The position numbers were made by a program, and so were the translations under genes. Below the pieces are notes generated by a model. The model did not search any database and had not been told where the DNA came from. It worked only from the letters and a program-made list of their open reading frames with translations. Below, in pieces: positions 2,864-54,317 of a stretch of DNA of 64,000 bases; positions within the stretch are counted from its first letter, which is position 1, and each line of letters opens with the position of its first letter. The stretch lies in the IMG/VR virus record IMGVR_UViG_3300030673_000004, positions 62,001-126,000 of that record. One strand, given 5' to 3'.

Positions 2864-4785
2864 ACAGCATCACCATCTTCCTCGGTATCACCAGCGTCAA
2901 TTCCCAACAATTCACGACGATACTGAACTTCACTACCCATCATGTGATCTATTTCCATATCATCATCGTCATCAATAGTCAACCGCACAAGTCTACGTTT
3001 TGAAGGATCCATTGCAATCAGTCTCAGTTGATCCGGACGAAGCTCTCCCCAGCCTTTAGCTCTAGTCAAAAGTACGCTACTTCGAGGCGTTGCCTTGAAC
3101 TGAGAATACACGTCATCAGGAGTATCACCAAAAAACTTTTGGTCCTTATATGAACCTAAGTACAAAGGAGCATTTATAAAATATACGCGACCCTGCTCAA
3201 CCCAGGGACGAAAGTATAAAACAAAAAGAGCAGAAAGTAACGATGCAATGTGATATCCATCATCATCAGCATCAGTCAACATGGCAATCTTACCTACCCT
3301 GCCCTTAGATGGGTCACAACGAGAACCAACAGGCGTACCTATTGTTGTAATAATATCCATCACAGAGGGACTCTTAAGAACTTTAGCCAAAGATACCCTA
3401 CCTGTATTTAAGATCTTACCACGAATGGGTAGTATCTCCTGCCAATCAAAAGATGCAGGTTTTGCTGTGGTCCCCGCACTATCACCCTCAACGATAATAA
3501 GTTCACGATCCTCAGGACGAACCCAAGGCTTAGCTTGCTTAAGCTTTATAGGAAGATCAACACGAGCATCGCGTGCAACAATCTTCATAGATTTCACAGC
3601 TTTATTATCTTCAGATAACCGAGTAAAATTAGACTGAAATCTTTGAGATCTATCTAAGATAGCTTTAACAAGAGTCTTATTACGGGTAAAGAACTCAATA
3701 AGAGCAGGCTCTAACATATCACGAATAGGCTTAACTACGTCAGGACTCATTAATTTATTCTTTGTCTGACCCTCATAGACAGGATCCTGCATCTTAATCT
3801 GAATAGCAGCACGTAAACCAAACACTAGAAAACGAGCATCAATATCAACCTTACTATCCGTATTTACTGCTGAGGCTAAAGCAGCCTTCAAAGCACTGAC
3901 ATGAAAACCTGCCTCTTTTGTAAACGAGGAATTACAGTACGAACGTATATCAATTAAATCATTATCATACCAACATAGAGCCACAGACAAAGAAATCTGA
4001 CACTTAGCATAAGATTCTATCAAAGCAGCTCGTGAATCTAAAACAGATGCCTCTAAGAAGAAGGGCTTGCCTAAAGCATCGGGTTCTTCATCACAAGATG
4101 AAACAAAATCAAGCATACCCCGCGATGATTTGTAAGTAGTTGAAACACCATCAACAACAACATCTAAAGTTAAACCAGGATTTAGATATGAAAGATCCCG
4201 AGCTTCTTCTTGCAACCTATCCAAACTAGGATGATAATCAGCAAATAATACTTTATCTAACCGAAACGCAATCACAGTACCGCACCCAAGGCTAATATTC
4301 TTATCAGGCACAGTTTTCTTTATATCACCTAAGGCCATGCCTTGACAAAAACTCTGATAATGCCATCTATTTGAACGAAAAGTCCAAAAAGCGAAATACT
4401 CAGACAAAGCATTTGTAGCCGAGGCACCAACACCGTTCATGCCAGAAGATGTTTTATAGCTATCAGCATCAAATTTAGCACCAGCATGAATACGAGTAAA
4501 CACCGTAGTAGCTGCAGGGAGACCTGTTGCTTCATGAATATCTACAGGTATGCCACGCCCCTTGTCTGCAACATAAAATGTCCACGTAGTTGTATCAACC
4601 GTGATTTTAATATAATCACCATGGCCATCTAAGTACTCATCAATAGCGTTATCAATAACCTCACGAAGACATCGAAAAGCACCCTCATGCTCGGTAGAAC
4701 CAACATACATACCAGGTCGTCTACGAATAGCTTCAGGGAAATCAAGAACACGAATAGACTTAGCTGAGTATTTATCAGCAGGCAT
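2860..4785 (-). CDS. gyrB: Type IIA topoisomerase/gyrase subunit B
   Basis: [87 protein letters not shown]. Confidence 0.95.
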
Positions 4786-28569: not shown

Positions 28570-29530
28570 ATCAGCACAGAGCAAGAGCATCGACAGCGTC
28601 ACAAGACAATATCGGTAATCAAGCGAAGTGTCATTCATCTTTGACAGTTTTGGTGGGCGCATTGCCCAAGTGAGTGTTAAGCAATCATCTTCATTGGGAG
28701 GTTGGCCTAAAAGCAGCCATCCTATAATGAGTGACGAGCAGAACCGAACAGTAAAGGCTTTAGAGGAAACATCCTGTGACTGGGAGAGCTCACATGTCTT
28801 GAAAGACAGCACGTGGGTGTTGACACCGAATATGAAGCAGGGTGCTAAAGTTCTTGGGGAAGGTTGATAGGAAAGTCGCATGGGAGTCGCGTCCCTGGCA
28901 ACGTCAAAATGGCTAAGACTGAAACTATCTTTTAATGTGAAGTCCATCATAGCAATATGTTCACCTTAGTGACAGCCTGTCTATTCCGATGCACTCGGAC
29001 GGCAGAGAGACTTGATTTGTGGTTGGTTTGTCTCTTTCTGTCGGACTCGGTCAATCAATCTTGTGTAGTCTTTGGCGTATAAGCACACCAATGGAAGTGA
29101 TCGTAGATTACAGTACTTGTGAAACTAAACGCTCGGGTGGTAGCCAACCCACAGAGGCGCTAAGGGGTACAATGGAAAGTTGTACCTGTCGATAGGGACC
29201 TAAGCTACCCCTACAGGGAAATGAGTCGGGTGATCCGAATGATACCTTGTACAGCCGTAGTAATACGGTCTTCTCGGAACTTGCGTGAAATTAAACCACA
29301 CGGGAAGAGAAGCGTAAGTGCGCTTTGAAATAAGCTAGACAATAAGTACTGTTTTTTACTGCAGGCTCACGCTTGCGTGAGTCTGAAACGCCATCTCAGT
29401 GAGAGTGCTGATGGCATTATGCATGATAGAATGCTGGTATTGCATAACTTGTACCTTAGCCAACCTAGGGAATCAAGTCCAGAATCGTAGCGTTGGGACT
29501 CAACCGAGTCGGTGAAATTCCTGTCGGTTA
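28570..29530 (+). ncRNA. Large structured ncRNA candidate (family unassigned; GOLLD/ROOL-like context)
   Basis: About 960 nt after a promoter with no credible plus-strand gene; dense hairpins at 28795-28808, 29166-29186, 29255-29268 and 29362-29385; abuts the first tRNA. Confidence 0.6.
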
Positions 29531-29532
29531 TT

Positions 29533-29606
29533 TGGGGTATAGCTCAGTAGGTAGTAGCTCCGTGCTGTTAACACGGTGGTCAAAGGTTCGAGTCCTTTTA
29601 CCCCAG
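29533..29606 (+). tRNA. tRNA-Asn(GTT)
   Basis: TGGGGTA/TACCCCA acceptor; CCGTG-CTGTTAA-CACGG; AAAGG-TTCGAGT-CCTTT. Confidence 0.92.
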
Positions 29607-29659
29607 CTATCGAACTTTAGTTTTAGTTCGTGGTCAAACTTTGTATAAATCTGGTAAAA

Positions 29660-29720
29660 CGGGAAGGTAGGACGCTGGGTCTGAAAACCCTGGGTATCAG
29701 TTCGATTCTGATAGTGTGCT
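29660..29720 (+). pseudogene. Degenerate tRNA-Phe(GAA) fragment
   Basis: GGGT-CTGAAA-ACCC arm and ATCAG-TTCGATT-CTGAT T-arm; no pairable D-arm or acceptor 5' strand. Confidence 0.45.
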
Positions 29721-29723
29721 TTT

Positions 29724-29877
29724 GTTCTTCCGCTGAAATGGACACTAAGCGGACGTGGTGCTGGGACCTTTAAGTTACAGGTAATGCTGGGCGGCGGTCA
29801 AAATCGGACAGAACCTTGTAGGTTGTATTGGGTCGCTCCCTATACAGCAAGTGGACTGGGCACCGCAGCGGAGGAAC
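29724..29877 (+). ncRNA. Unassigned structured RNA (~154 nt)
   Basis: 12-bp closing helix GTTCTTCCGCTG/CAGCGGAGGAAC; internal GGTGC/GCACC and a 29822-29848 hairpin. Confidence 0.55.
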
Positions 29878-29886
29878 TTTGTTGCT

Positions 29887-29960
29887 GGTCCTATCGTCTA
29901 ATTGGTTAGGACACCACCCTCTCACGGTGGGAGTGTGGAGTTCAAGTCTCCCTAGGACTA
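29887..29960 (+). tRNA. tRNA-Glu(CTC)
   Basis: GGTCCTA/TAGGACT; CCACC-CTCTCAC-GGTGG. Confidence 0.92.
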
Positions 29961-30187
29961 TAAATAAGTGTAGTTTTGCATTAAGCAGACTTTGAAATAA
30001 GAGTGCTTAATGTTTAGCTGCATGAAGTCCGGTAGTCGCCCTGAGTAGCCAGCGGAGACGTTGACCTTTGGGTGAAGCTGAAATAATTGCTTCCTACCGG
30101 CATTTTGCTTTGCTTATATGTACAATGTAATAACGCTATACATATAAGTGAATTGTGACTAGTTCTTCGTTAGGAGAATCCTCACAA

Positions 30188-30263
30188 GCCGCGCATTAGT
30201 CTAAATGGTAAAGACATTCCGGAATCATTCCGGAAAATGTTGGTTCGAATCCAGCACGTGGCA
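30188..30263 (+). ncRNA. Atypical tRNA-like RNA with TCA at the tip of a palindromic anticodon arm
   Basis: D-arm GTCT/AGAC, T-arm GTTGG-TTCGAAT-CCAGC, acceptor with a 2-nt bulge; anticodon arm TTCCGGAA-TCA-TTCCGGAA. Confidence 0.7.
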
Positions 30264-30264
30264 T

Positions 30265-30360
30265 GATGGGATAGCTCAATTGGTAGAGCGGCTCGCCCCC
30301 TTTAGGGATCGGGTGTGAAGGAGACTTCGTCGGTTGATGGTTCGAATCCATCGCTCATCT
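30265..30360 (+). ncRNA. Atypical tRNA-like RNA with expanded anticodon region and long variable arm
   Basis: GATGGGA..TAGCTCAATTGGTAGAGC; GCTCG[CCCCCTTTAGGGAT]CGGGT; variable arm GTGAAG-GAGA-CTTCGT; GATGG-TTCGAAT-CCATC. Confidence 0.7.
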
Positions 30361-30793
30361 ATCTGTATAATAAGTAGTTGCGAACTTATTATTGTGCGCT
30401 TGAGCACTAGCCTGTATAAGGTTTTCTTTATACAGAAAGCAGAGCAACTTGGGAGTAGCCAAGTTATATTAACCTACTCGCAATCATGATCAAGATTAAA
30501 TAGAATCCGTTCTTGCTCGGGGCATATTGCAGACCGCCCATAGGTTTCAGACGTTATTGAAAATCTATGAATGTTTCTGCTAGACAATAAGCATTTCATA
30601 TGGAGACTCTATGTCCCTGCACGCATGCATCTAGTTAGCGCTTGCTCTGCTTGCACGATATACAGAACAGTTGATATATGTGAATGCTGAGTTGCTGTTT
30701 CCTGTGTAAATAGGTTACAGTTTGGTAGCATTTTGTGAAAGCAACTTACTACCACGAGGATGATACAGGTAATCTCGTAAAAACTGTATCAAT

Positions 30794-30866
30794 GCCAGTG
30801 TAGCTCAGTTGGTAGAGCAGTTGCTTTGTAAGCATCAGGTCGCGAGTCCAAGTCTCGCCGCTGGCT
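30794..30866 (+). tRNA. tRNA-Thr(TGT)
   Basis: GCCAGTG/CGCTGGC; loop TTTGTAA. Confidence 0.92.
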
Positions 30867-30867
30867 C

Positions 30868-30996
30868 TTGTTCCTTGCTGTTAAGAATGAAGTTCATCTT
30901 ACCTAAAACAAGATATTTTGGATTCGAATCCAAAATACGCTTAACCGCGTATGGCTTTGGTGCCAATTTCTTCATTTTGCTTGTTTGCAGGAACAA
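30868..30996 (+). ncRNA. Y-RNA-like element 1 (degenerate tRNA-mimic domain)
   Basis: TTGTTCCT/AGGAACAA stem; TGCTGTT...TTGTTTGC signature; inner hairpins in T-AS-D order (TTTTGGA-TTCGAA-TCCAAAA, TACGC/GCGTA, GGC-TTTGGT-GCC). Confidence 0.7.
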
Positions 30997-31001
30997 ACTT
31001 T

Positions 31002-31074
31002 TCAGTCATGCTGTTCTGACATCAGGTTCATCCTTTTAAGATATTTTCCCGATGTTGATTTGTTTGCTGACTGA
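31002..31074 (+). ncRNA. Y-RNA-like element 2 (minimal, 73 nt)
   Basis: TCAGTCA/TGACTGA stem; TGCTGTT...TTGTTTGC; GGTTCATC motif; no tRNA domain. Confidence 0.7.
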
Positions 31075-31087
31075 TTTACTGTAGAAA

Positions 31088-31227
31088 GGTCAGTGCTGTT
31101 AGAGATCGGTTACTTCCAATTTCAAGGACGAGGTCACAGGTTCGAGTCCTGTTCCTGGCTTTTAATGCCGGGATAGCTCAGTTGGTTAGAGCGCGTAAAC
31201 TATCCGGTTTCGTTTGTTTGCCTGACT
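31088..31227 (+). ncRNA. Y-RNA-like element 3 (YrlA-type, full tRNA-mimic domain)
   Basis: GTCAG/CTGAC stem and signature; T-arm ACAGG-TTCGAGT-CCTGT precedes acceptor TCCTGGC-loop-GCCGGGA, then D-arm GCTC-AGTTGGTTA-GAGC. Confidence 0.85.
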
Positions 31228-31232
31228 GTTAA

Positions 31233-31305
31233 TGGCCCTTAGCTCATCTGGTAGAGCGCTACTCTGATATGGTAGAGGTGCTTGGTTCGAGTCCAAGAGG
31301 GCCAA
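31233..31305 (+). tRNA. tRNA-Ile(GAT)
   Basis: TGGCCCT/AGGGCCA; CTACT-CTGATAT-GGTAG. Confidence 0.92.
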
Positions 31306-31311
31306 TTCTTT

Positions 31312-31377
31312 ATACTTGCTGTTAGTCTTCAGATACATCTTTGGCTTGTAAAACCTGAAGACAGTTGTTTGCAGTAT
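31312..31377 (+). ncRNA. Y-RNA-like element 4 (minimal, 66 nt)
   Basis: ATACT/AGTAT stem; TGCTGTT...TTGTTTGC; GTCTTCAG/CTGAAGAC; GATACATC motif. Confidence 0.7.
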
Positions 31378-31385
31378 GAAGATAT

Positions 31386-31457
31386 GCACGAGTAGGTCAG
31401 TGGTAGACCACCTGCTTGCCAAGTAGGATGTCGTGGGTCCGAAACCCATCTCGTGCT
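31386..31457 (+). tRNA. tRNA-Gly(GCC)
   Basis: GCACGAG/CTCGTGC, U73; loop TTGCCAA. Confidence 0.92.
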
Positions 31458-31581
31458 TAGATGCGTAAATGAAATATGTCAACAAATGCTTCTATCATAT
31501 CTAGTAATCCGTGTATTCCATCTGGAGTTTATCCTGTGAAATCACCATCACCAGCCACACCTCCGAAGCATACATAAAAGT

Positions 31582-31706
31582 CCTATCTCAGTATAACCTT
31601 ACGAGCTAGCTGCCCTTGTTAGTGATAATAAGGAAGGTCAGGTCAAAGTCCTGGAGCGCCCCCGTTAGGCACAATAAGGAGCTTACGGTAACGGTACTGA
31701 GATAGG
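31582..31706 (+). ncRNA. Unassigned rod/multibranch RNA (125 nt)
   Basis: Perfect 12-bp helix CCTATCTCAGTA/TACTGAGATAGG enclosing further helices and CAGG-TCAAAGT-CCTG. Confidence 0.55.
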
Positions 31707-31710
31707 CAAT

Positions 31711-31782
31711 GCACCAGTAATTCAGTGGTAGAATCTCTGCCTTCCAAGCAGTTGGTCCCCAGTTCGATCCTGGGTTGGTGCT
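31711..31782 (+). tRNA. tRNA-Gly(TCC)
   Basis: GCACCAG/TTGGTGC, U73; loop CTTCCAA. Confidence 0.92.
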
Positions 31783-31966
31783 TTTGTTCATGGTGATGCT
31801 TGAGCAATAAATAGTATACTTTCATCACAGAGTATAATATAAATCTCCCGTGCATAAGAAGATGCGGAAATTCGGATAACGCAGCTTATGTGCTAACGGA
31901 CACTGGTGTTGATCGCACCCTGTTAGGGAGTTTTTGATCAGTACGTTTTCAGATCAAAACATTATT

Positions 31967-32050
31967 GGGTTGGATTGTAGTACGGCTACTACAGATGGAC
32001 TGTAAATCCATTGCCTTTCGGCTTTGCCTGTTCGAATCCGGAGCAACCCA
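31967..32050 (+). tRNA. tRNA-Tyr(GTA), imperfect T-stem
   Basis: ATGGA-CTGTAAA-TCCAT; variable arm GCC-TTTC-GGC; GGGTTG/CAACCC acceptor. Confidence 0.8.
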
Positions 32051-32089
32051 CTTCATTTTTCATAATCACCATTGTTAAGGGAGTTACTT

Positions 32090-33478
32090 ATGCCTACCAT
32101 CGTTGAGAATGCTCACGGTGTTCGGGCTTACGAATTTGGAGATGAAGTGTCTCTTCGTAGGCTTGTTCTTGCGTCCTTGCTGACTGAAGATTCTTCAGAC
32201 ATGCAAAAGCAAATCGCTGACTTGGTGCCTCGTGTAAGTCCTACGTCTGTGATGAATCTGGCGATCACAGCTCGTAAGGATTATGCGCTACGCAAGGTTC
32301 CCTTGTTTTTGGTTCGTGAGATGTCTCGCTATGAAAACCATCGTCCCTATGTAGCAGATACTCTAGCTCAAGTTATTGAGCGTGCTGATGAGATGAGCAC
32401 TTTTCTATCCATGTATTGGGCAGGAAAGAATGTAGGCGAGGGGCGTGAGCCTCTTGCTAGGCAGGTTAAGCTTGGGTTGGGGCGTGCTTTTGGGAAGTTC
32501 AATGCTTTCTCTTTGGCTCGTTATGATCGTAATAGTGCTGCATTTTCCATGCAGGATGTTATTAGGATCGCGCATCCTCGACCTGAGTCTCCTGAGCAGG
32601 AAGTACTCTTTCGACAGATTGCTAAGGGTGAAGCTCTTCCTCCTGTAAAGGATTGGGAACACGAGCTATCTCAGTCAAAGGACAAGAAGGCTTCATGGGT
32701 TTCTCTTTTGGAGAACAAGCAGCTTGGTGGCCTTGCTCTGTTGAAGAACTTGCGTAACATGCTGCAAGCCGGTGTCTCTCAAAGTTTGATTGTCTCAACT
32801 ATTGCTCAGCATCCGTTCAAGTATGTTTTGCCCTTTCGGTTCATCTCTGCTCTTCGTGAGCTTGTGCTATCTGATGTAGTTGTCTCTAACGAACTGCGGG
32901 ATGCTTTAGAACAAGCAATGTTTCGCGGTTTGGTGGATTTTCCTAAGCTTGACGGAGATACCGTGTTCCTTGTTGATGTGTCTGGGTCTATGAGTCATCC
33001 TCTTGGGATGTCTTTCTCAGATCGGCACGGTAGGACTCATGCTAGCTCTATGACTCGATCTGATGGCGCTGCTGCTTTGACTATGATGCTGAATGAAATT
33101 TGTGATGTACCTCACATCTTTAAGTTTCATACGCGAATCATTCCAATTTCCGGGTCTCGCGGTTTTGCTCTAGGGTCTCAAGTTAACTATGCGCGGCAAA
33201 ACACACGTCTGGGTGACTGCTTAAAGCAGGCTCAGCATGAGATGTTGGTTAAGGGAATCACTCCTAAGCGTTTGATTGTTTTAACGGATGAGGAGTCTCA
33301 GGATCCTGTTGGGGAAGGATTCGCTCAGTATAACTACATGATCAACGTGAAGTCGGCTTCTTACAGTATTGCTTATAAGTCATGGATCCGCATGACTGGC
33401 TTTAGTGAGCATATTGTTAAGCTGCTTGTTGGGCATGAGCGGTTAGATAAGTATGTTAAGGAACATGTAGCATTGTGA
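32090..33478 (+). CDS. rsr: Ro60/Rsr TROVE-vWA RNA-binding protein
   Basis: LRRLVLASLL, LRKVPLFLVREM, VIERADEM, KFNAFSLARYDR, WEHELS, LALLKNLRNM, VLPFRFISA, VDVSGSM (MIDAS), LIVLTDEESQD; ATG with an AAGGGAG RBS. Confidence 0.93.
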   Translation: MPTIVENAHGVRAYEFGDEVSLRRLVLASLLTEDSSDMQKQIADLVPRVSPTSVMNLAITARKDYALRKVPLFLVREMSRYENHRPYVADTLAQVIERADEMSTFLSMYWAGKNVGEGREPLARQVKLGLGRAFGKFNAFSLARYDRNSAAFSMQDVIRIAHPRPESPEQEVLFRQIAKGEALPPVKDWEHELSQSKDKKASWVSLLENKQLGGLALLKNLRNMLQAGVSQSLIVSTIAQHPFKYVLPFRFISALRELVLSDVVVSNELRDALEQAMFRGLVDFPKLDGDTVFLVDVSGSMSHPLGMSFSDRHGRTHASSMTRSDGAAALTMMLNEICDVPHIFKFHTRIIPISGSRGFALGSQVNYARQNTRLGDCLKQAQHEMLVKGITPKRLIVLTDEESQDPVGEGFAQYNYMINVKSASYSIAYKSWIRMTGFSEHIVKLLVGHERLDKYVKEHVAL

Positions 33479-33529
33479 ATTTCTGCCTGCAGTGCCTTGA
33501 GGGGAGGGTATTGTGGGTAGATTTTGTTC

Positions 33530-33603
33530 GGGCGAGTAGCTCAGATGGCTAGAGCAGTTGGTTCTTAACCAACGGGTCGTGGGTTCGAGTCCCACCTCGC
33601 CCA
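33530..33603 (+). tRNA. tRNA-Lys(CTT)
   Basis: GGGCGAG/CTCGCCC; GTTGG-TTCTTAA-CCAAC. Confidence 0.93.
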
Positions 33604-33606
33604 TAG

Positions 33607-33750
33607 CTTGAATACATGCTGTTTGACTTCGGATACATCAACTAGATGGTCGCAGGTTCGAATCCTGTTAAGGCTTTGAAAGAAGCTTTATAGCTCAGTT
33701 GGTAGAGCACCAAGCTAAATTTCCGATTTCTTTTGTTTGCTGTATTTGAG
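33607..33750 (+). ncRNA. Y-RNA-like element 5 (YrlA-type, full tRNA-mimic domain)
   Basis: AATACA/TGTATT stem and signature; GCAGG-TTCGAAT-CCTGT, then TAAGGCTTT-GAAA-GAAGCTTTA, then GCTC-AGTTGGTA-GAGC. Confidence 0.85.
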
Positions 33751-33755
33751 TTTTT

Positions 33756-33819
33756 GGGGATGTCGTCTAGTGGTCTAGTTTTCATGGTGGCTACTTGAGT
33801 TCGAATCTCAGCCTCCCTA
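33756..33819 (+). pseudogene. tRNA-Glu(TTC)-like pseudogene with internal deletion
   Basis: GGGGATGTCGTCTAGTGGTCTAG joins directly to TTTTCATGGTGG; the D-stem 3' strand and anticodon-stem 5' strand are missing; T-arm intact. Confidence 0.7.
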
Positions 33820-33832
33820 TTACTTAGATCTG

Positions 33833-33861
33833 TTGACACAAATCTTTGACTGTTGTATATT
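33833..33861 (+). promoter_or_regulatory. sigma70 promoter
   Basis: TTGACA-17-TG.TATATT. Confidence 0.75.
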
Positions 33862-33872
33862 TGGTTGTGTTA

Positions 33873-33957
33873 GCCCAGATGGTGGAACTAGGTAGACACT
33901 GGGGTCTTAAAAACCCTTGACTGTAATGTCGTGCGGGTTCAAATCCCGCTTTGGGCA
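33873..33957 (+). tRNA. tRNA-Leu(TAA)
   Basis: GCCCAGA/TTTGGGC A73; loop CTTAAAA; long variable arm. Confidence 0.92.
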
Positions 33958-34028
33958 CTTTATATAATGTGGTGCATTGCCCTCTAGGCGTGGTTACTAG
34001 GCTAAGTTGCGGGCATCTCAGAAGACAC

Positions 34029-34057
34029 TTGACATCCATGCAATAGTATAGTATATT
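34029..34057 (+). promoter_or_regulatory. sigma70 promoter
   Basis: TTGACA-17-TATATT upstream of a tRNA and tmRNA. Confidence 0.75.
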
Positions 34058-34066
34058 TGTTTTACT

Positions 34067-34137
34067 GGGGCTATAGGCTAGGGGTAAACCTGCGCGTCTG
34101 CAACGCGCCTTCCCCGGTTCGATTCCGGGTGGCTCCA
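34067..34137 (+). tRNA. tRNA-Ala(TGC) with C33, or Cys(GCA) anticodon on an Ala acceptor (ambiguous)
   Basis: Acceptor GGGGCTA/TGGCTCC-A gives G3-U70 and A73; arm GCGCG-TCTGCAA-CGCGC, alternative register CTGCAAC. Confidence 0.7.
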
Positions 34138-34159
34138 CTTCTTTGATATCTTTGAATTC

Positions 34160-34512
34160 GGGGGTGTATTGGTTTCGACAGATTCTGTGAGAATGATAGC
34201 GCGTGTCGAGGGTCCAGGTGGCCTCGTAAAAACCTGGAAAAAGTCAAACGGCGAAGAGATCTACTCTTACGCTCTGGCTGTCTGAGAAATCAGATACCAG
34301 AACCTTGCAATGAGATGCTGTTGTAGTTGCTTGGTATAATCTAGACGGCTGGGTTACAGTAATGTTTGTAGTCTGTAACTAAGAAAATCAAACTACGGTG
34401 TGTATGAGTCTGTTCTTCGACGCATGCGCAGTTAAGATCAAAAGAAGAACTACACACGTAGTGTTTTCATTTAAGTAGTTTTTGGACGCGGGTTCGAGTC
34501 CCGCCACCTCCA
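34160..34512 (+). ncRNA. ssrA: tmRNA; tag (A)GEEIYSYALAV at 34250-34285
   Basis: GGGGGTG TATTGGTTTCGAC 5' end; GACGCGGGTTCGAGTCCCGCCACCTCCA 3' end with G3-U; internal tag ORF ending ALAV-stop. Confidence 0.95.
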
Positions 34513-34545
34513 TTGTGTAAATGAGATCTATTTAAGGAGATCTCT

Positions 34546-34878
34546 ATGTCGGATGTAGTAAAAGATTTGTTACCTGATGAATATAACAGGGTACTTTCTT
34601 CAAATTCTGTGTCTGTAGTTGATTTTTGGGCTTCATGGTGTGGTCCGTGTACCGCGTTAGCTCCTGTCTACGAGGATATTGCCTCGGAGTATCAGACGAA
34701 AGCTAATTTTTACAAACTTGATGCTGGAGAACATACTGCTTTCGCAAAACAATTAGGGATACGAACGATTCCTACCTTGCAATTTCTGAGTAAAGGTACT
34801 ATTGTTCAAACCCTTACAGGTGCTACTACGAAAGACGCTATCATGGCTGCTCTTTTGCAGGCACTCTCTCTCATTTAA
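34546..34878 (+). CDS. trxA: Thioredoxin
   Basis: VDFWASWCGPC, IRTIPTL; AAGGAG RBS. Confidence 0.95.
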   Translation: MSDVVKDLLPDEYNRVLSSNSVSVVDFWASWCGPCTALAPVYEDIASEYQTKANFYKLDAGEHTAFAKQLGIRTIPTLQFLSKGTIVQTLTGATTKDAIMAALLQALSLI

Positions 34879-38252: not shown

Positions 38253-38325
38253 TGGCTTGTAGCTCAGTGGATAGAGCAACGGACTTCTAATCCGTGGGTC
38301 GAGAGTTCAAGTCTCTCCAGGCCAA
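38253..38325 (+). tRNA. tRNA-Arg(TCT)
   Basis: TGGCTTG/CAGGCCA; ACGGA-CTTCTAA-TCCGT. Confidence 0.93.
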
Positions 38326-38328
38326 TTT

Positions 38329-38402
38329 GTCTGCATAGCTCAACTGGATAGAGCGCAAGTTTCCTAAATTTGAGGTTGATCGTTCAATTCGATCTGCAGA
38401 CA
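38329..38402 (+). tRNA. tRNA-Arg(CCT)
   Basis: GTCTGCA/TGCAGAC; CAAGT-TTCCTAA-ATTTG. Confidence 0.92.
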
Positions 38403-41083: not shown

Positions 41084-42331
41084 ATGCCTGATACAAAAGT
41101 TGCTTTGCATGTAGAAATTCCTGATGATATTCTGAAGTTGATCCAAGGTAAAGCAAACATATTGATTCATGGTCGTGCTGGTACAGGTAAGTCAACTATT
41201 TTGCGAGCAATAACTGCTAAATACCAAAATAGTGTTGTTTTGTCTCCTACGGGCATAGCAGCATTAAATGTGGGTGGTCAAACGATTCATTCATTTTTTG
41301 GTTTAGGCTTTGGTTTTCTGCAGCCTAAAGATGTGCGTTCTTGCTATCGTCAAAAATCCGTGCTGGAGAAGCATCCGATCATTATTATTGATGAAGTATC
41401 TATGGTACGCTCTGATGTCTTTACCGCGATAGACGTAGCCTTAAGGAAGACTCTTGGTGTTAAGCGTCCTTTTGGTGGCCTTCAGGTAATACTGCTTGGT
41501 GATACAGGTCAACTACCTCCTGTTGTTGTTTCAAACGAAAAAGCATTCTTTCCTGATGGAACATCTATGTTTTTTCGTTCTCAGTCTTTTGCCGATGCTC
41601 TTTTTGAGCATGTTGAACTAAACCATGTGTATAGGCAGACACATGCCGGGTTTATTGAGTTTTTGACCCGTATTAGGAATCTGTCTGTGACTCCTCGTGA
41701 CATGCACGATTTTAATGCACGTGTTTCTGTGTGTAATACAGAAGAGTCTTTAGGTGATCATATAATTCTATGTTTAACCAATAGAGCTGCCGAAGAGGTG
41801 AATGCTTCTAGATATCAAGAAATCCAATCTCCTGAGCATGTGTATCATGCAAACATCACAGGTTCTATAGCTGAAAGGGATTTTCCTACAGCCGAGTCCT
41901 TGAGATTGAAATGTGGCACTAAAGTGCTGATGCTTAGAAATGATAGTGATGGTCGTTGGGTTAATGGTACCATGGCTGTTGTTAGTAAGCTTTTGCCTCG
42001 TCAGATCTGGGTGACGATAAAAGGTAAGGAACATGAAGTTACTAAAGAAGTTTGGGAGAAGTTTAAGTACGACGTATCTGGTCAGGCTATACGTAAAACA
42101 GTAGCGGGGTCATTTGAACAATTTCCCTTGAAGCTTGCTTGGGCAATTACGGTACATAAGTCGCAAGGTATGACTTTAAGTCGTTTTCATTTGGATTTAA
42201 GTACTCCTCCTTTTGAGCACGGGCAACTTTACGTGGCCCTATCGCGTGCTGAGGGTCTTGATAGTATCTCATTGTCCCGTGCTCTTGAGATGACTGATGT
42301 AAAAGTTGATCGTGACTTGCTTTTAACCTAA
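41084..42331 (+). CDS. PIF1/RecD-like SF1B helicase
   Basis: GRAGTGKS, SPTGIAA, GQTIHSFF, IIDEVSM, GDTGQLPPV, YRQ, LRNDS..WVNG, QFPLKLAWAITVHKSQG, GQLYVALSR. Confidence 0.95.
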   Translation: MPDTKVALHVEIPDDILKLIQGKANILIHGRAGTGKSTILRAITAKYQNSVVLSPTGIAALNVGGQTIHSFFGLGFGFLQPKDVRSCYRQKSVLEKHPIIIIDEVSMVRSDVFTAIDVALRKTLGVKRPFGGLQVILLGDTGQLPPVVVSNEKAFFPDGTSMFFRSQSFADALFEHVELNHVYRQTHAGFIEFLTRIRNLSVTPRDMHDFNARVSVCNTEESLGDHIILCLTNRAAEEVNASRYQEIQSPEHVYHANITGSIAERDFPTAESLRLKCGTKVLMLRNDSDGRWVNGTMAVVSKLLPRQIWVTIKGKEHEVTKEVWEKFKYDVSGQAIRKTVAGSFEQFPLKLAWAITVHKSQGMTLSRFHLDLSTPPFEHGQLYVALSRAEGLDSISLSRALEMTDVKVDRDLLLT

Positions 42332-45232: not shown

Positions 45233-45319
45233 GGAAGCGTAAAGCGTAATTGGTTGACCGCCCTGGTTTAGAAAACCAGTATCCGAAAGGGTTTGTAGGT
45301 TCGAGTCCTACCGCTTCCG
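45233..45319 (+). tRNA. tRNA-Ser(AGA)
   Basis: GGAAGCG/CGCTTCC G73; CTGGT-TTAGAAA-ACCAG; variable arm ATCC-GAAA-GGGT. Confidence 0.9.
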
Positions 45320-47449: not shown

Positions 47450-47887
47450 ATGTCAGATGAGTCCCTTACAAAAGTTCAGCATCGTGTATCTTCTATCCTG
47501 CATGTGCAGGTGGGTGAATCAGGTGTCTGGGAGCCTACTACAGATCAGCTTGATGCTCTAGTCAGTCAGTTTGTTTCGGCAGTAAACACAAATGTAGCTC
47601 TTGCAGTAGTAGCTACTCGTAAGGGCGTGACTGCTCAGTGTATCCATATTCCAGATACCGATGCTGCTATACTGCATGTTGAGGCAGGCGCACCTGGATG
47701 GGAGCCGTTACCATCCGAGCTTAAAGATCTAACAGATTTGTTTGAGAAAGCAGCTACTTCTGACGGTAGTATTGCTGTAGTAGCTACTCGTACCGGTGTG
47801 ACTGCTCATGTTGTGGATTTATCCAATCCTGATTCTGAGGCATTTCCTGAGTTTCTATATGACACTGATTGCGAGGATGCGTCATGA
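47450..47887 (+). CDS. Protein with two tandem ~60-aa repeats
   Basis: ILHV..G..G.WEP....L..L...F..A.....AVVATR.GVTA occurs twice. Confidence 0.8.
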   Translation: MSDESLTKVQHRVSSILHVQVGESGVWEPTTDQLDALVSQFVSAVNTNVALAVVATRKGVTAQCIHIPDTDAAILHVEAGAPGWEPLPSELKDLTDLFEKAATSDGSIAVVATRTGVTAHVVDLSNPDSEAFPEFLYDTDCEDAS

Positions 47888-48561
47888 ATCTCTATGAACA
47901 TGCTGTGAGCGAATTTGAGTTGCTTGAGCAGAATTTGGACAGTGATCCAGATAAGCATCCTATCATTTTAGAATTCAAAGCTGAAATTCTTTCTCTAGTT
48001 AAGCGTTTTGCGGACTCTGGTCCATCTGGTGGTTCTGCTCCCTTTTATGCGTCTGCCGTATCTCGGGCTATTAAAGATCTCTTTATGTTTGATCCTATTG
48101 GTCCCCTCACAGGAGATGATAGTGAGTGGGTAGATACATCTGAAATTAGTGGCCTGTCTGAAGGAACGCTATGGCAGAATAAGCGGCTATCTTCTGTGTT
48201 TAAGGATGGTAATGATCCGGCTCATTACTTGGATGCTGTTGTATTCCAAGGTGAGTCTGATTATGATCGTTTCAGTGGTCATGTTGATAATGTTTCCAGT
48301 GTTTGGTGTATTAAGAGTTTTCCTTTTAGACCCAAAACATTCACAATAGACGTGTATCGTGTTCCTAGTGAGACAGATCCAGATCGTGTCAGTTGCCGTG
48401 AAGGTGATTATTTATACCACATTAAAGATCCTTCACAGTTAGAGGCTGTTCGCGACTACTATGATGAGAAGATATCTCGGATATCTTCAATAGACTCAAC
48501 ATCGGCTGTAGGCGCGCAAGTTGATGCTGTTTGCTGCCCAAAGACAGTAAAGTTGGACTAA
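47884..48561 (+). CDS. Hypothetical protein
   Basis: GAGG RBS; GPSGGSA, PIGPLTGDDSEW, WQNKRLSSVFK. Confidence 0.75.
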   Translation: MNLYEHAVSEFELLEQNLDSDPDKHPIILEFKAEILSLVKRFADSGPSGGSAPFYASAVSRAIKDLFMFDPIGPLTGDDSEWVDTSEISGLSEGTLWQNKRLSSVFKDGNDPAHYLDAVVFQGESDYDRFSGHVDNVSSVWCIKSFPFRPKTFTIDVYRVPSETDPDRVSCREGDYLYHIKDPSQLEAVRDYYDEKISRISSIDSTSAVGAQVDAVCCPKTVKLD

Positions 48562-48574
48562 TTTTGTTTGCATC

Positions 48575-48682: not shown

Positions 48683-48704
48683 CTTTTCTTAGTGCATACT
48701 TAAA

Positions 48705-48793
48705 CTCAATATACTGTTAGTTTTCGGATACATCTTCGCCATACATGAAGACCTCCTGAAAGGGTAATCCGATTACGTAAGTTTGTTATTGAG
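48705..48793 (+). ncRNA. Y-RNA-like element 6 (divergent, remote)
   Basis: CTCAATA/TATTGAG stem; TACTGTT..TTTCGGATACATC...TCCGAT..TTTGTT matches elements 4 and 5. Confidence 0.55.
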
Positions 48794-48802
48794 GTTACTT
48801 GA

Positions 48803-53593: not shown

Positions 53594-53622
53594 TTGACAA
53601 GTATACATTAGAAATGTATACT
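53594..53622 (+). promoter_or_regulatory. sigma70 promoter with extended GTATACA-N7-TGTATAC palindrome
   Basis: TTGACA-agtatacattagaaatg-TATACT. Confidence 0.85.
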
Positions 53623-53660
53623 TGTTTTTGTACTTAAACTTTAACTGTGGCTGTACTTTA

Positions 53661-54317
53661 ATGTCTGTTCAAAAATATCCACGAACGTATCATGCGCCCT
53701 GGTCTGATTGTCTTGCTTCAGATGACAAGTACATCGGGTCGTTGGTTGCCTTTGATGGTAAGCGTGTTATTGTTACAGAGAAAATGGATGGTGAGAACAC
53801 TACGCTTATGTCTGACCGGGCTTTTGCTCGCAGCATTGATTCCGTTCATCATTACAGTCGTGATTGGGTTAAGGCATTTTGGGCTACAATCAAAAATGAT
53901 ATTCCTAAGGACTGGCGTATCTGTGGTGAGAATTTGTGGGCACAACACGCTATTGCCTACAACGACCTCAAGTCTTTCTTTATGGGGTTTTCTGTCTGGG
54001 ATGACAGGAACATCTCATTGTCCTGGGATGCTACTCTTGAGTGGTTTGACCTTCTGGGTGTTACTCCAGTAACAGCCATCTATGATGGCCTCTACGATGT
54101 TGCTGCTATCATGGATGCTTTTGATGCTTATAAGAAAACAGCAGGTCATGACGTAGAGGGGTATGTCATTCGCGTGGCAGATGAGATTGCTTATGCTGAT
54201 TTCAGGACGCACATGTGCAAGTACGTTCGTAAGAATCTTGTTCAGCTTGATACGGCTCATTGGCTGTATGGCGGTCGTGCTGTCATTCCAAATAAACTCT
54301 ATACTGAAAGCACCTAA
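53661..54317 (+). CDS. ATP-dependent RNA ligase (Rnl2-like)
   Basis: KYPRTYH.PWS, VIVTEKMDGENT (intact KxDG), ICGENL, GFSVWD, EGYVIR, KYVR. Confidence 0.9.
   Translation: MSVQKYPRTYHAPWSDCLASDDKYIGSLVAFDGKRVIVTEKMDGENTTLMSDRAFARSIDSVHHYSRDWVKAFWATIKNDIPKDWRICGENLWAQHAIAYNDLKSFFMGFSVWDDRNISLSWDATLEWFDLLGVTPVTAIYDGLYDVAAIMDAFDAYKKTAGHDVEGYVIRVADEIAYADFRTHMCKYVRKNLVQLDTAHWLYGGRAVIPNKLYTEST

What the first reader, a model, noticed from the sequence alone, without database searches (positions are those of the whole stretch)
31088..31227. Circularly permuted tRNA fold (T-arm, closed acceptor, D-arm)
Seen: here and at 33607-33750 the 3' half of a tRNA precedes the 5' half. The acceptor stem is capped by a loop (TTTTAAT or GAAA) and the anticodon arm is replaced by the long Y stem. 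D and T loops are near-perfect tRNA consensus. Established: this is the YrlA architecture. The two copies use unrelated acceptor sequences, suggesting independent tRNA donors or long divergence.
Basis: partly seen in the sequence, partly recalled or inferred. Interest (0 to 1): 0.75.

Follow-up and report, generated by a model that had tools for sequence, protein, structure and literature searches.

The report
Phage Y RNAs with tRNA-like module
Two small RNA genes flanking the Ro60 gene of an uncultivated 375-kb peat phage fold like a tRNA read in permuted order, which is the already described YrlA type of bacterial and phage Y RNA, so this is a well-supported but ordinary new member.

Summary
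At 31085-31231 and 33608-33750 (+) a T-arm, a 7-bp acceptor helix closed by a loop, and a D-arm follow each other. They sit on a long stem formed by the RNA's two ends. The tRNA tertiary-contact nucleotides are all present, and no credible anticodon arm is.

Both RNAs flank a TROVE/Ro60 gene (32090-33478). Both match Rfam YrlA below threshold (34.8 and 37.7 bits; cut-off 69). ARAGORN calls them tRNA only after in-silico permutation.

Orthologues next to 61-90%-identical Ro60 genes in metagenomes keep the fold: 96.6% of cells pair, 22 of 34 pairs show compensatory change, and all 7 acceptor pairs covary. A model built from them also finds arrays of such RNAs beside Ro60 in known Caulobacter, Xanthomonas, Rhizobium, Brevundimonas and Microcystis phages.

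So this is a YrlA-class Y RNA. The literature already describes YrlA as a circularly permuted tRNA and already reports it in phages.

Two differences from canonical YrlA:
- The GNCGAA Ro-site motif is replaced by U-GC-UGUUA / UUGUUU-GC.
- The acceptor is always 7 bp, as in the RNase P-cleaved M. smegmatis YrlA.

"Independent tRNA donors" is not supported, because acceptor sequences turn over quickly by covariation. Four more Y-like RNAs lie in the same tRNA island. Expression and Ro binding could not be tested.

The parts
31085..31231 (+). Y3, the YrlA-type Y RNA gene (the finding). Basal stem 31088-31093/31222-31227; bulged U 31094; GC clamp 31095-31096/31220-31221; internal loop UGUUA 31097-31101 / GUUUGUUU 31212-31219; upper stem 31102-31109/31204-31211; UUAC (YUAY) 31110-31113; V-like linker to 31127; stub 31128-31130/31194-31196; AGGUC 31131-31135; T-arm 31136-31152; acceptor 31153-31159/31167-31173 with loop UUUUAAU; D-arm 31176-31192.
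   Evidence: Sequence; Rfam YrlA 34.8 bits; R1 151.6 bits; covariation
33608..33750 (+). Y5, the second YrlA-type Y RNA gene. Basal stem 33607-33616/33741-33750; bulged U 33617; GC clamp 33618-33619/33739-33740; upper stem 33625-33633/33722-33730 (two central mismatches); T-arm 33652-33668; acceptor 33669-33675/33684-33690, extended by 2 pairs and capped by GAAA; D-arm 33693-33708; 5-nt insertion CCAAG after position 26.
   Evidence: Sequence; Rfam YrlA 37.7 bits over the full model; R1 113.9 bits; remnant of its 3' half in L001
32090..33478 (+). Ro60/Rsr orthologue (462 aa, TROVE domain), the presumed protein partner. AAGGGAG precedes the ATG.
   Evidence: Pfam TROVE E 1e-11. Best solved relative is Thermus phage phiLo Ro60, 9KOP/9L5Y, E 2.4e-19. 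2403 TROVE homologues found
30867..30998 (+). Y1, a Y-like RNA with the same stem motif. Its three inner hairpins are a decayed T-arm / closed acceptor / D-arm series (TTGGATTCGAATCCAA; ATACGC-TTAACC-GCGTAT; GGC-TTTGGT-GCC).
   Evidence: Motif pair; fold z -5.1; R1 51.6 bits, and 61.5 bits for its L001 orthologue
31001..31077 (+). Y2, a short Y-like RNA: stem, UGCUGUU/UUGUUUGC loop, upper stem, no tRNA module.
   Evidence: Motif pair; fold; orthologues in L001, L009 and L010 with compensatory stem changes
31308..31382 (+). Y4, a short Y-like RNA without a tRNA module, between tRNA-Ile and tRNA-Gly.
   Evidence: Motif pair; fold z -3.3; R1 44 bits; orthologues in L001, L003 and L006
48703..48796 (+). 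Y6, a probable further Y-like RNA between tRNA-Met and tRNA-Val. Its clamp is AC/GU instead of GC/GC, and it shares UCGGAUACAUC with Y5.
   Evidence: R1 35.1 bits, E 1.6e-6 on the whole genome; fold. No orthologue examined.

Best explanation
These are two paralogous genes for YrlA-class Y RNAs of an uncultivated 375-kb phage with terminal repeats, from peat.

Shown:
- Each RNA pairs its 5' and 3' ends into a long stem.
- The stem carries a conserved asymmetric internal loop: U bulge, a GC clamp, UGUUA on the 5' side, UUGUUU and GC on the 3' side.
- On top of the stem sits a tRNA-like module in the order V-loop, T-arm, 7-bp acceptor closed by a loop, D-arm.
- This module has every nucleotide that tRNAs use for the D/T-loop elbow: U8, A14, G15-C48, G18 G19, G53-C61, U54-A58, U55, C56.

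Inferred:
- The conserved stem loop is the docking site of the phage Ro60 ring encoded between the two genes.
- The tRNA-like module is the effector end. By analogy with D. radiodurans, Salmonella and Thermus phage phiLo, it tethers Ro60 to a host partner, most likely PNPase (the phage has none) or another tRNA-binding factor, and gates access to the Ro60 cavity. That would place the RNP in RNA surveillance or decay during infection.
- The genes lie 1-5 nt from flanking tRNA genes and have no strong promoter of their own. Their ends are therefore probably cut out of polycistronic tRNA transcripts by RNase P and the tRNA 3'-end nucleases.
For: - Architecture read directly from the sequence.
- Rfam YrlA is the only non-tRNA family matching both copies (E 7e-6 and 5e-5 over 3.9 kb).
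- Ro60 gene between the copies, same strand.
- Five orthologues of Y3 in syntenic metagenome contigs plus Y5: 96.6% of cells paired, 22 of 34 pairs with compensatory change, 7 of 7 acceptor pairs covarying, no shuffle or slid control comes near.
- Sixteen sequences including four known phages: 95.6% paired, 28 of 34 compensatory, and the clamp covaries GC/GC to GG/CC.
- In the whole 375-kb genome the model hits only this tRNA island.
- ARAGORN recognises the arms only after permutation.
- Tight packing against tRNAs. The only strong promoters lie downstream at 33833 and 34029.
- The phage lacks PNPase and RtcB but has a CCA-adding enzyme and an Rnl2-type RNA ligase.
- Literature: YrlA biology and phage occurrence (PMC4201824); crystal structure of the YrlA tRNA mimic (10.1101/312249); phage Ro60-Yrl-PNPase complex (PMC12135203).
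Against: - Both copies score about half of Rfam's YrlA gathering cut-off.
- The GNCGAAN0-1G / CGAA motif used to define the Ro60 site of YrlA and of phiLo Yrls is absent from all six Y-like RNAs. Ro60 binding at the new motif is therefore inferred from position and conservation only.
- No RNA-seq run was listed, so transcription, ends and processing are unobserved.
- The protein-RNA complex prediction was not folded.
- Single-sequence fold energies are only modestly better than shuffles (z -1.8 and -2.7).
- The effector (PNPase or another) is pure analogy.
Confidence: 0.8

Rival explanations
1. A processed, two-piece Y RNA. RNase P cuts the closed acceptor 5' of position +1. The 3' strand is trimmed and receives CCA from the phage's own nucleotidyltransferase. 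The Ro60-bound RNA then carries a true tRNA-like open acceptor end, as in M. smegmatis YrlA. This refines the best explanation rather than excluding it. It may hold for Y3 (floppy UUUUAAU loop) and not for Y5 (9-bp helix with a GAAA cap).
For: - The acceptor is exactly 7 bp on a 5-bp T-stem in every member of the clade and in the other phage YrlAs. [quoted passage not shown]
- Loops of Y3 orthologues are unstructured and 3-10 nt long.
- The phage encodes a PolyA_pol/CCA-adding family enzyme, and 31 of 33 of its tRNAs lack an encoded CCA.
- In two other phages the loop starts N-CCA directly after the acceptor 3' strand (CcrColossus L023 3028-3199, Rhizobium phage L026 3111-3252).
Against: - No RNA data.
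- Neither window copy encodes CCA in its loop.
- Y5 and several phage homologues have GNRA-capped, extended helices that look built to stay closed.
- Salmonella YrlA and D. radiodurans Yrn1 are not cleaved.
Confidence: 0.3
2. A circularly permuted tRNA gene in the strict sense, as in the red alga Cyanidioschyzon merolae. The transcript would be circularised and re-opened to give a functional, decoding tRNA.
For: ARAGORN calls the permuted sequences tRNA-Gly(tcc) and tRNA-Lys(ttt) when introns are allowed.
Against: - Those calls treat the whole Y stem as a 61- or 48-nt intron at a non-canonical position. They build mismatched anticodon stems from linker sequence that is not conserved in orthologues.
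- What is conserved instead is the long terminal stem with its internal loop, and that is useless for a tRNA.
- The element sits beside Ro60 in many phages.
- From general knowledge, the circularising pathway is not known in bacteria or phages.
Confidence: 0.02
3. tRNA debris or an artefact. The apparent fold would be the T-arm of one decayed tRNA followed by the D-arm of the next. This is the false-positive class that the YrlA authors warned about.
For: - The island is full of tandem tRNAs, and R1 does give weak partial hits across true tRNA junctions (for example 38297-38355, 31 bits).
- A real pseudo-tRNA (33756-33819) and a tRNA/Y chimera (L001) exist in this locus family.
Against: - The two acceptor strands pair with each other, and the pairing is kept by compensatory change in all orthologues.
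- There is no upstream D or anticodon arm and no downstream anticodon or T arm.
- The outer stem and motif are conserved across phages with only about 35% identical Ro60.
- The stretch is identical in 91.6- and 94.0-kb contigs assembled from two runs.
Confidence: 0.03

Closest known systems
YrlA of Salmonella Typhimurium (Rfam RF02553; crystal structure 6CU1 as cited in 10.1101/312249)
   Same: Terminal stem with an internal loop next to a tRNA-like module in the order T-arm, closed acceptor, D-arm. D and T stems nearly invariant. YUAY element present. Encoded beside Ro60/Rsr on the same strand.
   Different: The window RNAs reach only about half the Rfam cut-off. The acceptor is 7 bp rather than 6. 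A V-arm-like linker is present. The GNCGAAN0-1G motif is replaced by U-GC-UGUUA / UUGUUU-GC. There is no rtcBA operon and the phage has no RtcB. The genes are embedded in a tRNA array.
YrlA of Mycobacterium smegmatis (PMC4201824)
   Same: About 147 nt, 7-bp acceptor stem, upstream of Ro60, co-transcribed with a second smaller Y RNA and processed from a precursor.
   Different: For M. smegmatis, RNase P cleavage, CCA addition and Ro60 binding are shown by experiment. Here none could be tested. The stem motif also differs.
Phage YrlA-like RNAs (mycobacteriophages, Caulobacter phage CcrColossus, Bacillus phage G; PMC4201824 as summarised in PMC12135203)
   Same: Phage-encoded Ro60 with several Y RNAs just upstream. 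My model R1 finds 3-6 hits upstream of Ro60 in CcrColossus, Xanthomonas MET23-P3, Rhizobium RHph_TM21B and Brevundimonas Kabachok, with the same motif type (clamp GG/CC) and 7-bp acceptors.
   Different: Ro60 is only 31-37% identical. The window phage spreads its Y RNAs between tRNA genes on both sides of Ro60 and has at least five or six of them.
Yrl1/Yrl2 of Thermus phage phiLo with phiRo60 (PDB 9KOP, 9L5Y; PMC12135203)
   Same: Closest solved relative of the window's Ro60 (E 2.4e-19). Phage Y-like RNAs upstream of Ro60. Ternary complex with host PNPase shown in vitro.
   Different: The phiLo Yrls were picked by a CGAA motif in a stem-bulge-stem. No tRNA-like module is described in the passages I read.
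Permuted tRNA genes and tmRNA
   Same: tRNA parts in non-canonical gene order; tRNA-like T-arm and acceptor. A tmRNA gene lies 410 nt downstream at 34160-34515.
   Different: Permuted tRNA genes encode a complete tRNA with an anticodon arm. tmRNA has an open, chargeable acceptor. The Y RNAs have neither, as encoded.

Membership tests
YrlA (Rfam RF02553; Chen et al. 2014) | Score at or above Rfam's gathering cut-off (69 bits) | tested here: not met
   34.8 bits (31128-31198, tRNA-like core only) and 37.7 bits (33626-33732, full model). Known phage loci also stay below the cut-off (36-52 bits).
YrlA (Rfam RF02553; Chen et al. 2014) | Encoded within 4 kb of a Ro60/TROVE gene, on the same strand | tested here: met
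   Y3 ends 859 nt upstream of the ATG at 32090. Y5 starts 130 nt after the stop at 33478. All lie on the + strand.
YrlA (Rfam RF02553; Chen et al. 2014) | tRNA-like module in the order T-arm, closed acceptor stem-loop, D-arm, with tRNA consensus D and T loops | tested here: met
   Read from the sequence. 100% pairing of T and D stems and 97.6% of the acceptor in A1. ARAGORN permutation test.
YrlA (Rfam RF02553; Chen et al. 2014) | 5' and 3' ends pair into a stem that carries the Ro60-binding site | tested here: met
   The stem itself is met: helices 1 and 2 are 94-96% paired with 11 of 16 pairs compensatory. That Ro60 binds there is not tested.
YrlA (Rfam RF02553; Chen et al. 2014) | GNCGAAN0-1G motif on the 5' strand of the stem | tested here: not met
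   No match in any of the six Y-like RNAs. The only CGAA occurrences are in T-loops. The conserved motif instead is U-GC-UGUU(A) with UUGUUU-GC opposite; UGCU is shared with the Rfam consensus AUGCU.
YrlA (Rfam RF02553; Chen et al. 2014) | Conserved YUAY at the start of the V region | tested here: met
   UUAC at 31110-31113 and AUAC at 33633-33636. UUAC in L001 and L003; UUCC and GUUC in L006 and L005.
YrlA (Rfam RF02553; Chen et al. 2014) | RNA is expressed, bound by Ro60/Rsr, and carries pseudouridine 55 and dihydrouridine | not testable with these tools
   No RNA run listed. The complex prediction was not folded.
tRNA (Rfam RF00005) | Cloverleaf in native order with an anticodon arm; 29 bits or more | tested here: not met
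   Only half-matches of 17.1 and 16.1 bits on Y5 and none on Y3. ARAGORN finds nothing in native order.
Permuted tRNA gene (Cyanidioschyzon type) | Complete tRNA, including a conserved 5-bp anticodon stem and 7-nt loop, recoverable after permutation | tested here: not met
   After permutation ARAGORN needs a 48-61-nt 'intron' and mismatched anticodon stems. That region is not conserved among orthologues.

The most novel reading that the evidence does not exclude
In this phage clade the YrlA-type Y RNAs are genuine substrates of the tRNA maturation line. They would be cut out of tRNA operon transcripts, opened by RNase P at the strictly conserved 7-bp acceptor, and CCA-tailed by the phage's own nucleotidyltransferase. 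The phage Ro60 would then carry a two-piece, open-ended tRNA mimic, possibly chargeable. A second paralogue (Y5, GAAA-capped) would stay closed. Such a pair, together with four stem-only Y RNAs using a CGAA-less Ro60 site, would form a graded set of Ro60 regulators that monitor or protect the phage's 33-tRNA pool during infection.
Probability: 0.12. Interest if true: 0.6.

Novelty: new member of a known kind. Interest (0 to 1): 0.3.

Why it matters
Mainly as annotation. It places an uncultivated jumbo phage among the Ro60/Y-RNA-encoding phages, and it shows that Rfam's YrlA model under-detects the phage branch: every phage locus tested scored below the cut-off, whereas a model built here scores 50-150 bits.

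Three modest points go beyond the textbook picture:
- A Ro60-site motif without CGAA is shared by distant phages and supported by covariation of its clamp.
- The 7-bp acceptor is universal in phage YrlAs. This makes the RNase P/CCA pathway, seen so far only in M. smegmatis, a testable general prediction for phages.
- Five or six Y RNAs are interleaved with tRNA genes. One has a decayed tRNA module, and a D-arm-mediated tRNA/Y-RNA deletion is seen in a relative. This gives a snapshot of how these RNAs duplicate, decay and recombine with tRNA genes.

Tried and rejected
- **Relatives by DNA or peptide pattern.** DNA similarity to 50,697 phage records found only tRNA-sized matches, so no close relative. 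A peptide-pattern scan of viral contigs for Ro60 relatives found nothing. Relatives came instead from the protein database and contig look-ups.
- **Complex prediction.** The Ro60 plus Y3 job was accepted but not folded. It is no evidence either way.
- **RNA runs.** None was listed. Laying DNA contigs confirmed the assembly: the stretch is whole in two long contigs with 0 differences. It gave no informative variants, and the many short 'joints' are other organisms' tRNAs.
- **Sixth exact motif pair.** The pair at 48525-48571 was rejected as a Y RNA. It folds no better than shuffles (z +1.2) and lies inside the 3' end of an ORF with a Tad3 domain. A seventh pair on the minus strand outside the window (genome 52098-52174) was not hit by R1.
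- **Independent tRNA donors.** Comparing the acceptor, D and T parts with all 33 phage tRNAs found no donor.
- **Strict permuted-tRNA reading.** Rejected.
- **Single-sequence MFE folds.** They mispredict parts of the tRNA module. The structure rests on comparative data instead.
- **RtcB, Rnl1 and PNPase.** Not found in the phage genome. The Rnl1 control rang nowhere, so that negative is void.

Full report
**1. What the window is**

The window is bases 62001-126000 of a single 375,537-bp virus record. The record has direct terminal repeats, is estimated complete, and has 42.8% G+C. The same stretch is found in peat metagenome runs. It lies whole and without a difference in contigs of 91.6 and 94.0 kb from two of those runs, which may be its source.

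From about 29.5 kb to 56 kb all genes run on the + strand. The region is a tRNA island with 33 tRNA genes (ARAGORN lists one more, odd call at 30265-30360) and a tmRNA at 34160-34515.

**2. The observation**

Both copies are as described.

Copy 1 (Y3):
- T-arm: ACAGG-TTCGAGT-CCTGT, 31136-31152.
- The 3' acceptor strand TCCTGGC follows at once. Then come a 7-nt loop TTTTAAT and the 5' acceptor strand GCCGGGA, giving 7 bp with one G-U.
- U8 A9, then the D-arm GCTC-AGTTGGTTA-GAGC.
- Before the T-arm stands AGGUC, a standard tRNA variable loop.

Copy 2 (Y5):
- T-arm GCAGG-TTCGAAT-CCTGT.
- Acceptor TAAGGCT/AGCTTTA, lengthened by a U-A and a U-G pair and capped by GAAA.
- U8 A9, then the D-arm GCTC-AGTTGGTA-GAGC.
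- A 10-bp terminal stem, 33607-33616 with 33741-33750.

In both copies the nucleotides that build the tRNA elbow are in place: U8, A14, G15 with C48, G18 G19, G53-C61, U54-A58, U55 and C56. This is read directly from the sequence.

A direct test of 'permuted tRNA' used ARAGORN. It finds nothing in either RNA in native order. When the part from the 5' acceptor strand onward is placed before the part ending at the 3' acceptor strand, it calls both, with perfect acceptor, D and T arms. It does so only in intron mode, treating the whole terminal stem as a 61- or 48-nt intron and inventing a mismatched anticodon stem. So the acceptor, D and T parts of a tRNA are present in permuted order, and a real anticodon arm is not.

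**3. What it is**

- The ORF between the copies (32090-33478, preceded by AAGGGAG) has a TROVE domain (E 1e-11).
- Its closest solved relative is the Ro60 of Thermus phage phiLo (E 2.4e-19).
- Rfam's YrlA model (RF02553) is the only non-tRNA family that matches both RNAs. It gives 34.8 bits on the tRNA-like core of Y3 and 37.7 bits over the whole model on Y5, against a cut-off of 69.

**4. Comparative evidence**

Ro60 proteins 61-90% identical to the window's occur on short metagenome contigs. I fetched eleven such loci. They are syntenic: the same tRNAs and the same small RNAs between them.

Alignment of Y3, four orthologues and Y5 (A1) with a structure I wrote by hand from Y3:
- 96.6% of cells pair, and 22 of 34 pairs show a change on both sides.
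- No shuffle out of 500 and no slid control comes near; slid controls give 36-45% paired.
- All seven acceptor pairs covary. The acceptors are TCCTGGC, TTCCAGC, CGCAGGC, AGTCCCC, ATGTCGC and TAAGGCT.
- The D stem never varies, and the T stem is always paired.
- Caveat: the structure was derived from one of the sequences, which favours it on the 'paired' measure. The compensatory counts do not suffer from this.

The covariance model R1 built from A1:
- It scores Y3 at 151.6 bits and Y5 at 113.9 bits, and finds two further orthologues in L007 and L008.
- In the whole phage genome it hits only this island.
- It also finds one to six elements beside Ro60 in known phages whose Ro60 is only 31-37% identical. 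These are Xanthomonas MET23-P3, Caulobacter CcrColossus, Rhizobium RHph_TM21B and Brevundimonas Kabachok (upstream of Ro60) and Microcystis Mvi-JY20 (downstream).
- Rfam YrlA matches some of these too, always below its cut-off.
- The 16-sequence alignment is 95.6% paired with 28 of 34 pairs compensatory. This alignment is fitted to the model and so leans towards it.

**5. The stem and the likely Ro60 site**

All Y-like RNAs of the window share one design:
- a basal stem of free sequence;
- a bulged U;
- a two-pair clamp (GC with GC);
- an asymmetric loop, UGUU(A) on the 5' side and UUGUUU on the 3' side;
- an upper stem ending in UCGG/CCGA;
- then a YUAY-like element.

All six TTGTTTGC octamers on the + strand of the window are preceded within 47-128 nt by TGCTGTT. 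In the other phages the clamp is GG with CC, which is a compensatory change. In the candidate at 48703-48796 it is AC with GU.

The motif that the describers of YrlA give for the Ro60 site, GNCGAAN0-1G, is absent from all six RNAs. So is the CGAA used to pick the phiLo Yrls. Only UGCU is shared with the Rfam consensus. That the new motif is the Ro60 site is therefore an inference from position and conservation.

**6. More Y RNAs than the finding lists**

| RNA | Coordinates | Nature |
|---|---|---|
| Y1 | 30867-30998 | Same stem; T-like, closed acceptor-like and D-like hairpins that have lost the tRNA consensus |
| Y2 | 31001-31077 | Stem only |
| Y4 | 31308-31382 | Stem only |
| Y6 | about 48703-48796 | Probable |

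A sixth exact motif pair at 48525-48571 is rejected.

The genes abut tRNA genes with gaps of 1-5 nt. In gene order, upstream of Ro60 lie tRNA-Thr, Y1, Y2, Y3, tRNA-Ile, Y4 and tRNA-Gly. Downstream of Ro60 lie tRNA-Lys, Y5 and a decayed tRNA-Glu. The only strong promoter-like sites in 29300-34600 lie downstream, at 33833 and 34029. Co-transcription with the tRNAs and release by the tRNA-processing nucleases is the natural inference. PMC4201824 reports processing of YrlA and YrlB from one precursor in M. smegmatis.

**7. Origin of the two copies**

The data point the other way:
- Orthologues of one and the same gene already have unrelated acceptors.
- The D and T modules of Y3 and Y5 are closer to each other than to any of the phage's tRNAs, and no tRNA matches both acceptor strands.
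- All paralogues share the stem motif.

Duplication followed by fast compensatory turnover explains the pattern.

Exchange with tRNA genes does happen, but destructively. In L001 (Ro60 90% identical) a 154-nt deletion joins the D-arm of tRNA-Lys(ctt) to the D-arm of Y5, leaving a chimera. L002 (84%) has no Y5 at all.

**8. How it probably works**

Shown here: the fold, its conservation, and its linkage to Ro60.

Taken from the literature:
- Bacterial Y RNAs bind Ro60/Rsr through the terminal stem. In D. radiodurans they tether it to PNPase and gate its cavity.
- Salmonella YrlA folds as an L-shaped tRNA mimic and is modified by TruB and DusA.
- M. smegmatis YrlA has a 7-bp acceptor. It is cut by RNase P, trimmed and CCA-tailed in vivo.
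- A phage Ro60 with its Yrl RNAs forms a ternary complex with host PNPase in vitro.

Inferred for this phage: Ro60 docks on the UGCUGUU/UUGUUUGC stem of each Y RNA. The tRNA-like module of Y3 and Y5 presents a tRNA-shaped handle to a host factor. PNPase is the default candidate because the phage has none.

Every phage YrlA examined has the 7-bp acceptor. The phage also encodes a CCA-adding-family enzyme. Y3, with its unstructured loop, is therefore a credible RNase P substrate. Y5, with a GAAA-capped 9-bp helix, looks built to stay closed.

A hint in the same direction comes from two other phages, where the loop begins N-CCA right after the 3' acceptor strand. Two of 16 is suggestive, not proof.

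**9. Comparison and novelty**

The thing works like YrlA and by most criteria is one. It meets linkage, module order, terminal stem and YUAY. It fails two formal tests, the Rfam cut-off and the GNCGAA motif. I file it as a member of the YrlA class in the broad sense, on a divergent phage branch, and not as a new kind.

The description as a circularly permuted tRNA, the occurrence in phages, the modifications and the RNase P test are all published (PMC4201824; 10.1101/312249; PMC12135203). What is new here is limited to:
- this uncultivated phage;
- the CGAA-less motif with its covarying clamp;
- the uniform 7-bp acceptor in phages;
- the size and layout of the Y RNA set.

**10. Limits**

- No transcript data.
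- No binding test.
- The host is unknown.
- The wider alignment is model-fitted.
- I could not see the supplementary tables of the 2014 paper. I therefore cannot say which of the phage RNAs found by R1 were already listed there.

Noticed in passing
window 30867-30998, 31001-31077, 31308-31382, 48703-48796: Four further Y-like RNAs with the same stem motif. One (Y1) has a decayed T/acceptor/D series, two are stem-only, and one has a compensatory AC/GU clamp. All are butted against tRNA genes.
   Followed up: partly
L001 2836-2960 versus window 33530-33750: In a relative with 90% identical Ro60, a 154-nt deletion joins the D-arm of tRNA-Lys(ctt) to the D-arm of Y5. The result is a tRNA/Y-RNA chimera that lacks both T-arms, so the shared D-arm sequence acts as a recombination site. 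A relative at 84% (L002) has no Y5.
   Followed up: yes
window 33756-33819: The homologue of the relatives' tRNA-Glu has lost 9 nt across the D-stem/anticodon-stem junction. It scores 20.9 bits on Rfam tRNA (cut-off 29) and ARAGORN does not call it. It is probably a pseudo-tRNA.
   Followed up: partly
L023 3028-3199 (CcrColossus) and L026 3111-3252 (Rhizobium phage RHph_TM21B): In these YrlA-like RNAs the acceptor loop starts with a discriminator base followed by CCA. In CcrColossus a hairpin insert follows, and the record annotates its 5' part as tRNA-Gln (3035-3102), which ARAGORN does not call. This may mark RNAs made to be opened into CCA-ended molecules.
   Followed up: partly
L022 3689-3759 (Xanthomonas phage MET23-P3): ARAGORN calls the 5' two-thirds of a YrlA-like RNA (R1 105 bits) tRNA-Asn. 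Its V arm is a 5-bp stem with the 7-nt loop CUGUUAA, an anticodon-arm look-alike. This hints that YrlA may descend from tandem tRNAs.
   Followed up: no
window 34160-34515: tmRNA gene (Rfam 178.7 bits) that ARAGORN did not report in the window. By my reading of the Rfam alignment its tag reading frame ends ...EEIYSYALAV. A relative's tmRNA (L009) has the tag AEESYSYALAV.
   Followed up: no
window 47869-48561: ORF of 230 aa with a Tad3 (Type I Thoeris inhibitor) domain, Pfam E 6e-24, inside the tRNA island.
   Followed up: no
window 53622-54317; genome 9473-9856 (-); window 34546-34878; window 41084-42331: Rnl2-type RNA ligase domain (E 2e-28); a CCA-adding/poly(A) polymerase family enzyme elsewhere in the genome (E 1.5e-25); thioredoxin right after the tmRNA; a Pif1-like helicase. 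No RtcB or PNPase was found in the phage.
   Followed up: partly
window 33833, 34029, 48575, 49791, 50550, 52575, 55599, 57406 (+); 10015, 9002 (-): A recurring near-consensus promoter-like element, TTGACA-N17-TATATT. Three copies share the spacer ATACAAAATTAATG. None lies directly upstream of Y1-Y5.
   Followed up: no
window 30265-30360 and 45235-45317: Two odd tRNA calls. One is a 96-nt 'tRNA-???' with a two-base anticodon call (Rfam 36.8 bits). The other is a match just at threshold (29.5 bits) that ARAGORN does not list.
   Followed up: no
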